Shown here: one piece after another, positions 47,299 through 49,775 of the stretch
How positions within the stretch are numbered: position 1 is the first letter of the stretch
Layout: every line of letters begins with the position of its first letter
Assembly: GCF_032062105.1 (NCBI RefSeq)
Contig: NW_026920569.1
Span: forward strand, 62,001 to 126,000
DNA from: Saccostrea cucullata
Lineage: Eukaryota
Length of the DNA: 64,000 nucleotides
Direction of reading: 5' to 3'
Notes under the pieces: generated by a model
Databases searched by the model: none
The model's input: only the letters and a program-made list of their open reading frames with translations
What the model was told of the DNA's origin: nothing
Position numbers and translations under genes: made by a program

Positions 47299-49775
47299 AT
47301 GAATGCGCCACCAACATTTGAATCGTTTCTTTTGTTTGATGGAGAAAAAAAGTTGGTACTTTTTAACAATAGATTATTTAATTTTTTCGATCTCTAACTT
47401 ACAGCAGGGTACTTAGCATTTTATCAATATTATGTGGCAATTAAAACATAAACAATGTGAATATGGTCATGATATCAGAAGATGATTTTGGCTAATATTT
47501 CAGAAATTTGATTTTAAACTAAAAATGACCTGAACAAATTCCAACAAAATATGAGATTTCATTGTGATGATGATTTTTTCTTCGACTTGTATCCACTTAA
47601 AGGATTAATGACTCCTTCAAACTCAAGTTTATCAATTTAAGCAATATGTCAATATTTTGTAGAATAACAATTGAGAAGGACACCAAAGTTCCAAATGCTG
47701 CCATATTTACTGTCAACAAGGAGGATCACACTTTGGGAAACATGATCACAGCGTAAGTATAAACTGTCAGTGAAGAAAATCATCAGCAATCGTAGAAGAT
47801 GCAGTCATTTGTTTGGAATGGCTATCATTAAAAACTCTTTTATTCATAGATGAACATAATATTGAATACCTTTGTATATACTTCATGCAGTAAAGTTCTT
47901 AGCTCTTCATGGTAAATTAAACAGGTCCAGTCCAAAGACTATTTCTACCTACATAGCTATTAAAAGCTACGTAGGTATTTAAACCTGCCCAAAGGAAAAT
48001 AAGCCACATTTTTACCTACTTTCTGCTTTACTTGCATTTTGTGGTCTTTATATTAAATTTGTCACAAAAATGTTTTAGAAGCCGGTTACAACGAACGGCG
48101 ATAACTCCTAACTGGCTTTAACATTTGTTTAATAATCTAAATTTCTATCTTTATTTACATGATAAATAATAAACACCTTTTTTTAATAAAGAAGATGGAT
48201 AGATAACAGTTAGTTCTCTTCATGGTATTTGTTCTACAAATTAATACAAAACTTCATGGTGAGCACTGAATTATTGATACAGTCACACTGATGATGGATT
48301 TGACGACTCCTATATCCTCATATAAAATTTTATTTAAATTACATTTTAAAAAATGATTACTTCGTATATTATCAATTTTGCATAGAAAGTTATGTAAAAT
48401 TGCCCATTCAGGAAGTAATCGTTTTTTGGTCAAAATTTTGTCGTATTCATCATTAGTGTGACTGTATCAAAAAATATGGTATTTACCATGTTGCGCGGTT
48501 CAGTCCTTTGGCCACGAAATGTAGATAATACAAAAAGTAGGTAAAAATAGCTACTTTGGGTAGCTTTAAATACCTACGTAGCTAAATTAATAGCTACGTA
48601 GGTAGAAATAGTCTTTGGACTGGACCTGTTAAATGATTAAATAAATATGAAAAAAACATCTGTGTTTTCAGACAGCTTAGAAAGGATCCTCAGGTACGTA
48701 GGTAGAAATAGTCTTTGGACTGGACCTGTTAAATGATTAAATAAATATGAAAAAAACCTGTGTTTTGCTGTTTGCCGGGTATAAAAATCCCCACCCCCTG
48801 GAGCATAAGTTTGTCCTGAGGGTACAGACAACAGCTGACTACAGTCCCCAGGAAGCCATTACCCACGCCATCACCGATCTCATCTCAGAGTTCTCTCTCT
48901 TAGAGGAGAGATTTAAGGTAGTTTGTCAATGATCACTGTTAGAGGAGAGATTTAAGTAGTTTGTCACAGATCATTATAAGAGGAGAGATTTAAGGTAGTT
49001 TGTCACAGATCATTTAAAACAAAGAGATTTAAGGTAGTTTGTCACAGATCACTGAAAACATCCCCAGGAGGCCATCACCCACACCATCACCAATCTTATC
49101 CTAAGAGTTTTCTCTCTTAGAGGAGAGATTTAAGGTAGTTTATCTTAAATCACTGAAAACAGAGAGATTTAAGGTAGTTTTTCACATATCACTGTTAGAG
49201 GAGAGATATAAGGTAGTTTGTCACAAATCACTATTAGAGGAGGAATTTAAGGTAATTGTTACTGATCGCTGTTAGAGGAGAGATTTAAGGTGGAGTATCA
49301 CTGATCACCGTTAGAGGAGAGATATAGAGTAGATTAGCACTGATCACTGTTAGAAGAGAGATTTTTTTTGAGTTAAGGTTGAGCCATATAATATGGTGTC
49401 TCAGTTTTTCAAGGAATAATCTTTTTAAATCTGTAGAGGAACAGCAGGTATAATGTAACTCAGGTTAGCATTGTTGCCCATGGGTATTTTGTTTTTCTCC
49501 ATATCTTTTTTTCCTGTCGTGTACAATTAAATGTAGTTGGGTAGAGCTGTATCCAAACTTATTTGTGAGTTTTTAGCTCACATAAGCTGAGAGCTCAAAT
49601 GAGCTTTTTTTGATCAGATTTTGTCTAAAGTCTGTCTGGACCTCTTCTTTAACTTAATCAGAAAATAGAGTATAAATATATGACTGATCTCATCTTTTTC
49701 TGAGCTTATTTTTTTTTTTTTTTTTGTTTTGAATAGGAGGCAGTCCGTGAGAAACAAGAAGGTGATTTGATATAG
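47299..49775 (+). CDS. POLR2J: RNA polymerase II subunit RPB11; exons 47299-47351, 47663-47752, 48672-48917 (interrupted by a 71-bp insertion at 48696-48766) and 49737-49775; probably a disrupted allele or copy as assembled
   Basis: [56 protein letters not shown]|[62 protein letters not shown]. Removing the insertion restores CAG GTG CTG TTT GCC. Confidence 0.93.
47921..48629. mobile_element. PIF/Harbinger-like MITE in POLR2J intron 2
   Basis: TIR ACAGGTCCAGTCCAAAGACTATTTCTACCTAC, extending imperfectly for ~100 bp. TAA on both flanks. Internal inverted pair TGATACAGTCACACT / AGTGTGACTGTATCA. Confidence 0.88.
48900..49365. repeat. ~39-bp minisatellite (~11 copies) built from the POLR2J exon-3 donor, with a longer exon copy at ~49061-49140
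   Basis: TTAGAGGAGAGATTTAAG|GTAGTTTGTCACAGATCA repeated and decaying with distance from the exon. Confidence 0.9.

What the first reader, a model, noticed from the sequence alone, without database searches (positions are those of the whole stretch)
48596..48803. Essential RPB11 exon 3 is broken by a 71-bp templated copy of the neighbouring transposon end and intron
Bases 48696-48766 duplicate 48596-48668 (MITE right TIR end plus intron, up to but not including the CAG acceptor). They sit inside the Val codon of DPQVLFAGY, shift the frame and add stops. The junction creates a good donor (CAG|GTACGT) but no AG at the far end. The next AG (48802-48803) is in frame but deletes 13 conserved residues ([13 protein letters not shown]); a non-canonical TG acceptor at 48767 would delete only Val. 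It looks like polymerase-theta-style templated repair giving a recessive null allele or a nascent intron. An assembly artefact is also possible.
Basis: partly seen in the sequence, partly recalled or inferred. Interest (0 to 1): 0.75.

Follow-up and report, generated by a model that had tools for sequence, protein, structure and literature searches.

The report
Broken RPB11 copy in oyster assembly
In this oyster assembly the only copy of an essential RNA polymerase II subunit gene carries a 71-base copy of nearby sequence inside an exon, but public transcripts lack it, so it is one damaged allele or an assembly error.

Summary
Bases 48696-48766 copy 48596-48668: 62 identical bases, a 2-base gap, then 9 identical bases. 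They split the Val codon of RPB11 exon 3 and bring a stop four codons on.

The copy holds 33 nt of a transposon end, its 5-nt target duplication and unique local intron, so it was templated from this locus.

The assembly (G000) has one RPB11 locus and no intact paralogue or second haplotig.

Laid contigs gave three results:
- Two runs of one sample (X1, X5) hold spliced, cDNA-like contigs. These join exons 1 to 4 at GT..AG borders, skip exactly the 71 nt (ends TA..TT), and differ at 2 of 335 laid bases.
- A relative's DNA contig (X3) has the exon uninterrupted.
- No run was shown to hold the insertion, and the assembly's own reads were not found.

So the insertion is derived and not part of the working gene. 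I favour a real null allele made by templated-insertion repair (about 0.5) over an assembly artefact (about 0.36). Nothing supports a new intron.

Earlier notes of this scan describe similar exon-breaking local copies elsewhere in this genome (heparanase, ARHGEF17, Myt1, PELP1). I did not check them.

The parts
47299..47351 (+). RPB11 exon 1, coding part. The transcript contigs start at 47283 or 47289. Donor AAA|GTTGGT.
   Evidence: The X1 and X5 contigs end this piece at 47351 and skip 311 nt (GT..AG) to 47663.
47663..47752 (+). RPB11 exon 2.
   Evidence: translation; PF13656, profile positions 2-18; piece 47663-47752, then a GT..AG skip of 919 nt; single locus in G000.
47917..48633 (.). Non-autonomous DNA transposon (MITE) in intron 2. 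The element is 47922-48628, with 48-nt terminal inverted repeats and a 5-nt target duplication TTAAA at 47917-47921 and 48629-48633.
   Evidence: I1, 96% complementary arms. (5-nt duplications in 7 of 7 elements checked). (871 first-look candidates). (word depth in the thousands in X3 and X4).
48596..48668 (+). Source (template) of the copy: 33 nt of the MITE right end, the 5-nt target duplication and 35 nt of unique intron 2. It stops just before the CAG acceptor.
48672..48695 (+). RPB11 exon 3, first part, ending in the first two bases of the Val codon.
48696..48766 (+). The 71-nt inserted copy (equally 48695-48765). It shifts the frame, puts a stop at 48703-48705, and creates the donor-like CAG|GTACGT at 48691-48699.
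   Evidence: It is absent from the X1 and X5 spliced contigs and from the X3 DNA contig.
48767..48917 (+). RPB11 exon 3, second part. It matches residues 57-106 of solved RPB11 chains from 48768 on.
   Evidence: (piece 48766-48918 in X1 and X5 with 0 other letters).
48902..49364 (+). 39-nt minisatellite built from the end of exon 3 plus the start of intron 3 (two arrays, 48902-49054 and 49117-49364). A partial copy of exon 3 lies between them at 49061-49100. It lies beside the finding and is not part of the lesion.
   Evidence: TRF; D1, D2, D4.
49737..49775 (+). RPB11 exon 4, coding part up to the stop.
   Evidence: The loose ends of the X1 and X5 contigs behind 48918 read as this exon (table 7).

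Best explanation
The 71 nt are a young, derived insertion in one haplotype of the sequenced oyster. This would be a heterozygous null allele of the single-copy, presumably essential RPB11 gene.

Inferred mechanism: a break or stalled 3' end inside the Val codon (at the AGGT site 48692-48695) was extended by copying the same chromosome region 100 nt upstream. Copying ran from inside the transposon's right end into the unique intron, with one 2-nt slip. The end then rejoined the exon with a single base of homology and no loss of flanking bases. This is a templated-insertion scar of the kind made by polymerase-theta end joining or by replicative template switching.

Consequences: the allele encodes a protein cut off after about 58 residues, and its RNA would be expected to be degraded. 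The species' working gene is the uninterrupted form seen in transcripts.

Shown: the structure, the local origin of the copy, the single locus, intact transcripts, and an intact exon in a relative.

Inferred: that the insertion exists in the animal's DNA, that the animal is heterozygous, and which repair pathway acted.
For: 1. The copy is 71 of 71 bases identical to the source apart from one 2-nt gap, and it includes locus-specific intron sequence. It was therefore templated locally and after the transposon arrived.
2. The junction has 1 nt of homology, and exactly 71 nt separate the two forms (skip 48694 to 48766, 'both' = 1). Passages of PMC4490562 describe single-nucleotide homology, and inserts identical to sequence close to the break, as the signature of polymerase-theta end joining in germ cells and in natural isolates.
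3. The spliced contigs in X1 and X5 lack the insert. The DNA contig of a relative (X3) joins 48695 to 48769 with two bases between, which is an intact exon.
4. The window has no N. The other laid exon bases agree with the transcripts at 333 of 335 positions with no gaps. Base-level consensus quality here is therefore good, and a 71-nt insert is not a typical consensus error.
5. No k-mer of useful length links the exon to the source, so a graph mis-join is hard to construct (inference).
6. Passages of PMC5804265 report many lethal or near-lethal alleles per oyster parent (about 7.25 in one study). A heterozygous lethal in a reference animal is therefore not surprising.
Against: 1. No read set was shown to hold the insertion. 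The best public holders have at most 0.09 of the sampled words. The four laid runs are contigs of other samples or other organisms.
2. 71 nt is long for the templated inserts I recall from end-joining studies. The size tables of PMC4490562 are in supplements that I did not open.
3. There is no accompanying flank deletion, whereas that paper describes templated inserts as accompanying small deletions.
4. Earlier scan notes list several similar exon-breaking local copies in conserved genes of this same assembly. If all were real lethals, the implied load would exceed the published estimates, which points towards an artefact class. Those notes are unchecked.
5. The copy straddles the transposon boundary. 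If the transposon is heterozygous, consensus or polishing software could misbehave there (inference).
Confidence: 0.5

Rival explanations
1. Assembly or polishing artefact. The animal's DNA has the ordinary exon, and the 71-nt copy was introduced by a chimeric read, by consensus building across a heterozygous transposon insertion, or by local reassembly during polishing.
For: 1. Nothing independent was shown to hold the insertion. Conspecific-like transcripts and a relative's DNA lack it, and the source reads were not found.
2. The duplicated piece spans the transposon/flank boundary, a place where two haplotypes may differ.
3. Other notes of this scan report similar local copies in exons of this assembly whose transcripts also lack them (unchecked).
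Against: 1. It is not a tandem duplication of overlapping contig ends. The 27 nt between source and copy are not repeated.
2. The junctions are exact, with 1 nt of homology and no other damage.
3. Surrounding exon bases are clean.
4. In 20 arbitrary 10-kb pieces of G000 plus the window (264,000 bases), this is the only young direct duplicate (95% identity or more) that is separated by a spacer and is not part of a tandem array. A frequent artefact class is therefore not evident, although that sample is small.
Confidence: 0.36
2. Newborn intron or RNA-level removal. The insert is in the DNA of the animals that gave the transcripts and is cut out of the RNA, either exactly (71 nt) or through the new donor CAG|GTACGT.
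For: 1. The insertion sits at an AGGT site, which the review PMC3443670 (passages) calls a protosplice site.
2. It creates a donor as good as the gene's own donors, and it carries the pyrimidine-rich 3' part of intron 2.
3. The transcripts skip exactly the 71 nt.
4. No DNA from the transcript sample was available, so its genotype is unknown.
Against: 1. The skipped piece ends in TA..TT (or AC..TT), not GT..AG, GC..AG or AT..AC.
2. No contig shows the 110-nt GT..AG form or the loss of the Val codon.
3. The transcripts carry base differences from the window in exon 2 and exon 3a, so they come from other haplotypes. A relative's genomic DNA has the exon without the insert. An allele without the insert explains everything more simply.
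Confidence: 0.04
3. This locus is a dead duplicate, and an intact RPB11 gene lies elsewhere in the genome.
For: The assembly is fragmented (23,869 contigs), so a second copy could in principle be unassembled.
Against: 1. Six-frame searches of G000 with exon 2 and exon 3b find only this locus. Exon 2 gave 1 match. Exon 3b gave 2 matches, the second being a 39%-identity hit at E 3.
2. The DNA search finds no other copy of exon 3.
3. The transcripts match this locus at 333 of 335 bases and use its intron borders.
4. Apart from the insert the reading frame is untouched.
Confidence: 0.02

Closest known systems
Templated inserts of polymerase-theta-mediated end joining (C. elegans germ line and natural isolates; PMC4490562, passages read)
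   Same: The insert is identical to sequence close to the junction, there is a single base of homology at the junction, and the event would be inheritable.
   Different: No flanking bases are lost. At 71 nt the insert is longer than I recall as typical (the size data are in supplements I did not open). Dependence on the enzyme is untestable here, and the event is unconfirmed in reads.
Replicative template switching (MMBIR/FoSTeS-type templated insertions; PMC8421209, seen only as a search listing and abstract start)
   Same: A backward switch to a nearby template at minimal homology, followed by a return, gives an interspersed local duplication of this shape.
   Different: Only one short, simple event is present, with no complex rearrangement. 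It cannot be told apart from end joining by sequence alone.
Intron gain by tandem genomic duplication at AGGT, or during double-strand-break repair (review PMC3443670, passages read)
   Same: The insertion is at an AGGT site inside a coding exon, a strong donor is created, and material from an existing intron is supplied.
   Different: It is not tandem, the AGGT is not duplicated at the 3' side, there is no acceptor AG at the end of the insert, and no spliced form using the new donor was seen.
Recessive lethal load of oysters (review PMC5804265, passages read)
   Same: A heterozygous knockout of an essential gene carried by a wild or farmed oyster is what that literature predicts at the molecular level.
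   Different: That literature maps lethals by segregation distortion. Here there is a candidate lesion but no genotype or segregation data.
Other exon-breaking local copies noted by this scan in the same genome (s1-716470 heparanase, s1-728166 ARHGEF17, s1-721977 Myt1, s1-701207 PELP1)
   Same: Each is a short copy of neighbouring sequence inside or across an exon. Where a follow-up was done, transcripts lack the copy, and the verdict was a broken allele or an assembly glitch.
   Different: These are different genes and different sizes. I did not see their sequences or check them.

Membership tests
RPB11 / POLR2J (RNA polymerase II subunit, Pfam PF13656 RNA_pol_L_2) | The domain matches above the curated cut-off. 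| tested here: met
   Exon 3b scores 55.1 bits (cut-off 27) on profile positions 29-74 of 75. Exon 2 alone scores 23.5 bits on positions 2-18, which is below the cut-off on its own.
RPB11 / POLR2J (RNA polymerase II subunit, Pfam PF13656 RNA_pol_L_2) | It is closer to RPB11 than to the Pol I/III paralogue RPAC2 or to archaeal subunit L. | tested here: met
   RPB11 chains score E 5e-23 to 1e-4, RPAC2 scores 1.7e-3 and 6.4e-3, and archaeal subunit L scores about 1e-3.
RPB11 / POLR2J (RNA polymerase II subunit, Pfam PF13656 RNA_pol_L_2) | It is expressed as a spliced mRNA with an open frame. | tested here: met
   The X1 and X5 contigs join exons 1 to 4 without the insert.
Polymerase-theta-type templated insertion scar | The insert is identical to sequence close to the junction. 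| tested here: met
   The source lies 100 nt upstream on the same strand: 62 + 9 identical bases with one 2-nt gap.
Polymerase-theta-type templated insertion scar | Homology at the junction is minimal (often a single nucleotide). | tested here: met
   'both' = 1; one shared T.
Polymerase-theta-type templated insertion scar | It is accompanied by a small deletion of flanking bases. | tested here: not met
   The insert-free form differs by exactly 71 nt, so no flank is lost.
Polymerase-theta-type templated insertion scar | The scar exists in the animal's DNA and depends on the enzyme. | not testable with these tools
   The source reads were not found and no genetics is available.
Spliceosomal intron (newly gained) | The removed segment is bounded by GT..AG, GC..AG or AT..AC. 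| tested here: not met
   The 71-nt skip has ends TA..TT (or AC..TT one base on).
Spliceosomal intron (newly gained) | It is removed from RNA made on DNA that contains it. | not testable with these tools
   No DNA of the transcript sample and no RNA of the assembled animal were available.
Intron gain by tandem genomic duplication | A tandem duplicate of an exonic segment places AGGT at both ends. | tested here: not met
   The 27-nt spacer is not duplicated. The copy ends in TTTTG rather than AG, and the next AG is 36 nt further on.
Transposon (MITE) insertion into the exon | Both element ends are present with a new target-site duplication. | tested here: not met
   Only 33 nt of one end are present, followed by the old target duplication and the old flank. 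No new 5-nt duplication surrounds the insert.

The most novel reading that the evidence does not exclude
The insertion is real, segregates in the species, and is a proto-intron caught at birth. Break repair at an AGGT site copied the tail of the neighbouring intron (pyrimidine tract and likely branch region) into an essential exon and in the same step built a strong donor. The allele would then be partly rescued by splicing (the 110-nt in-frame form or an exact non-canonical removal). Together with the similar cases noted elsewhere in this genome, it would show templated break repair as a recurrent source of both lethal load and new introns in oysters.
Probability: 0.05. Interest if true: 0.7.

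Novelty: new member of a known kind. Interest (0 to 1): 0.25.

Why it matters
If the insertion is real, it is a molecularly defined candidate for one of the recessive lethal alleles that oysters are known to carry in large numbers. It is also a clean natural example of a templated-insertion scar, with its template still in place 100 nt away.

If it is an artefact, it flags a type of error (short displaced local copies inside exons) that would produce false gene knockouts in the annotation of this assembly. Other notes of this scan suggest that it may recur.

Either way, the practical message is that RPB11 is not lost or remodelled in this species, because the normal mRNA exists.

Tried and rejected
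1. Second locus, paralogue or haplotig. Six-frame searches of G000 with exon 3b and exon 2, and DNA searches with 48635-48930 and with the neighbouring gene's exon, found only this contig. In one search, 39 of the 43 rows lie on other contigs and cover only the transposon end. One of them (on contig C9429) spans the whole 75 nt at 84% identity. I did not look at it further, because the local source is far closer.

2. Read support. The look-up of sequencing runs returned 9 runs, none holding more than 0.09 of the words and none on record as RNA. I laid 4 of those 9 (X1, X3, X4, X5) and did not lay the other 5. All four are contigs, so depth, heterozygosity and rare forms cannot be read from them. 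In X3 and X4 the insert region is swamped by transposon copies, so their depth there says nothing about the insert. The X4 contig piece starts at 48768, right at the insert boundary. That suggests X4 lacks the insert too, but no joint was listed for it.

3. Frequent artefact class. A self-comparison of the window and of 20 arbitrary 10-kb pieces of G000 plus the window (5 candidate rows, 4 of them inside tandem arrays) found no other young, spacer-separated local duplicate. That is 0 in the 200 kb of arbitrary sample, which is too small to exclude a rare class.

4. Transposition as the origin of the insert. Rejected, because the insert has one element end only and carries the old flank.

5. 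Tandem duplication. Rejected.

6. Full-length protein searches (search for homologous proteins and the like) were not run. The exons were searched separately.

7. Supplements of PMC4490562 (sizes and reconstructions of templated inserts) were not opened. They may bear on whether 71 nt is within the usual range.

8. Earlier scan notes were used as leads only. One search returned nothing.

Full report
**What is in the sequence**

The window carries a four-exon gene on the + strand:
- exon 1 (coding from 47299 to 47351)
- exon 2 (47663-47752)
- exon 3 (48672-48917 as assembled)
- exon 4 (from 49737, with the stop at 49773-49775)

Exon 3b (48768-48917) scores 55.1 bits on Pfam PF13656, the Rpb3/Rpb11 dimerisation domain, against a cut-off of 27. 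It aligns end to end with residues 57-106 of solved RPB11 chains at E 5e-23. The Pol I/III paralogue RPAC2 reaches only about 2e-3. The gene is therefore RPB11 (POLR2J).

**The lesion**

The repeat finder pairs 48592-48666 with 48692-48766 (family D3). The alignment shows 62 identical bases from 48596/48696, a 2-base gap, then 9 identical bases. The insert lies inside the Val codon that follows the residues DPQ. One T is ambiguous, so its coordinates are 48696-48766 or one base to the left.

Read through, the frame gives [10 protein letters not shown] and then a stop. The junction reads CAG|GTACGT, as good a donor as the gene's own three. The first usable AG behind it is at 48802-48803. That would give a 110-nt intron, in frame, at the cost of 13 residues. 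Of the 12 of those residues covered by the alignment, 11 are identical to mammalian RPB11.

**Where the copy came from**

Intron 2 holds a non-autonomous DNA transposon (47922-48628) with 48-nt inverted ends (I1). In 7 of 7 elements I examined (this one and six on other contigs), the two flanks carry a 5-nt target duplication, here TTAAA.

The insert consists of the last 33 nt of that element, the target duplication, and 33 nt of the unique intron behind it. Other copies of the family in G000 match only the element end (39 of the 43 rows lie on other contigs). The insert was therefore copied from this very locus after the transposon had landed.

It is not a transposition, because only one element end is present and there is no new target duplication. 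It is not a tandem duplication either, because the 27 nt between source and copy are not repeated.

**Is there another RPB11?**

No. Each of these has one locus in the 1.17-Gb assembly:
- exon 2
- exon 3b
- the DNA of exon 3
- the exon of the neighbouring gene

The pseudogene-with-paralogue reading is thus very unlikely. There is also no second haplotig to compare with.

**What public data say**

The look-up of sequencing runs found no run holding more than 0.09 of the sampled words, and none on record as RNA. I laid 4 of the 9 listed runs.

*X1 and X5.* These two runs come from one sample and are labelled as guessed DNA. Each holds a contig that does the following:
- joins 47351 to 47663 and 47752 to 48672, both GT..AG
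- then joins 48694 to 48766, skipping exactly 71 nt, with ends TA..TT and one base of shared homology
- runs on to 48918
- continues with letters that read as exon 4

These contigs are spliced, so they are cDNA-like. They differ from the window at 2 of 335 laid bases, which suggests the same species but another haplotype.

*X3.* This run is from another organism, about 97.5% alike in exon 3. Its 608-nt DNA contig joins 48695 to 48769 with two letters between. That is an uninterrupted exon with a synonymous change in the next codon.

*X4.* This run is from a third organism. Its contig piece begins at 48768, exactly at the insert boundary.

No contig uses the new donor, and none drops the Val codon. 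Because all four runs are contigs, rare forms and heterozygosity cannot be read from them.

**Reading**

The insertion is derived and is not part of the working gene, because the species makes a normal RPB11 mRNA. What remains open is whether the 71 nt exist in the assembled animal.

Points for a real allele:
- The junctions are exact, with 1 nt of homology.
- The copy carries a 2-nt slip.
- Neighbouring exon bases are clean, and the window has no N.
- This is the only young, spacer-separated, non-array direct duplicate in 264 kb sampled.
- Passages of PMC4490562 give single-nucleotide homology, and inserts identical to nearby sequence, as the germ-line signature of polymerase-theta end joining.
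- Passages of PMC5804265 report several lethal alleles per oyster parent.

Points for an artefact:
- Nothing independent was shown to hold the insert.
- The copy straddles a transposon boundary, where haplotypes may differ.
- Unchecked notes of this scan list similar exon-breaking local copies in other conserved genes of this assembly. Where followed up, their transcripts lack the copy. Taken at face value, that is more lethals than the published load suggests.

I put a real null allele at about 0.5, an artefact at about 0.36, RNA-level removal or a new intron at about 0.04, and a hidden paralogue at about 0.02.

**Comparison with the known**

The event works like a templated-insertion scar, from polymerase-theta end joining or replicative template switching. 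It meets the tests of a nearby template and of minimal homology. It fails the test of an accompanying flank deletion, and dependence on the enzyme cannot be tested.

It resembles models of intron gain at AGGT sites (PMC3443670, passages). It fails their defining features, however: there are no canonical borders around the removed piece, no duplicated AGGT, and no spliced form from the new donor.

**Limits**

- Supplements were not opened. Those of PMC4490562 may bear on the usual size of templated inserts.
- My statements that RPB11 is essential, and that the RNA of the broken allele would be degraded, rest on general knowledge and not on a call.

Noticed in passing
window 48902-49364 (arrays 48902-49054 and 49117-49364; partial exon copy 49061-49100): A 39-nt minisatellite is built from the last bases of RPB11 exon 3 plus the first bases of intron 3, so each unit repeats the donor AAG|GTAG (about 10 units). 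Between the arrays lies an 88% copy of 40 nt of exon 3. The transcripts use the first donor at 48917|48918. A contig of the related organism in X3 also lies on two places here, so the array is probably older than the species. It is the same kind of repeat as the exon-boundary minisatellite noted elsewhere in this genome (s1-710914).
   Followed up: partly
window 47917-48633; also L006-L012: A high-copy MITE family has 48-nt terminal inverted repeats, nested internal inverted repeats and a 5-nt target duplication (TTAAA, TTTAA, TTGAA, TTAAC) in 7 of 7 elements checked. There were 871 first-look candidates in G000, and word depths in the thousands in two related organisms. I did not assign a superfamily.
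   Followed up: partly
window 49737-49775 (exon 4): The X1 and X5 transcript contigs, from the same sample, differ by one base in exon 4, a synonymous CAA/CAG by my reading of the loose ends. At least two RPB11 alleles are therefore expressed in that sample, and neither carries the insert.
   Followed up: no
window 36122-36221 and 36356-36456: This is the only other spacer-separated local direct duplicate in the window (101 nt, 91% identical, 234 nt apart). It lies inside the neighbouring kinase-like gene region and looks older than the RPB11 copy.
   Followed up: no
window 54115-54672, minus strand: An intact 185-aa ORF has several hydrophobic stretches. I did not examine it.
   Followed up: no
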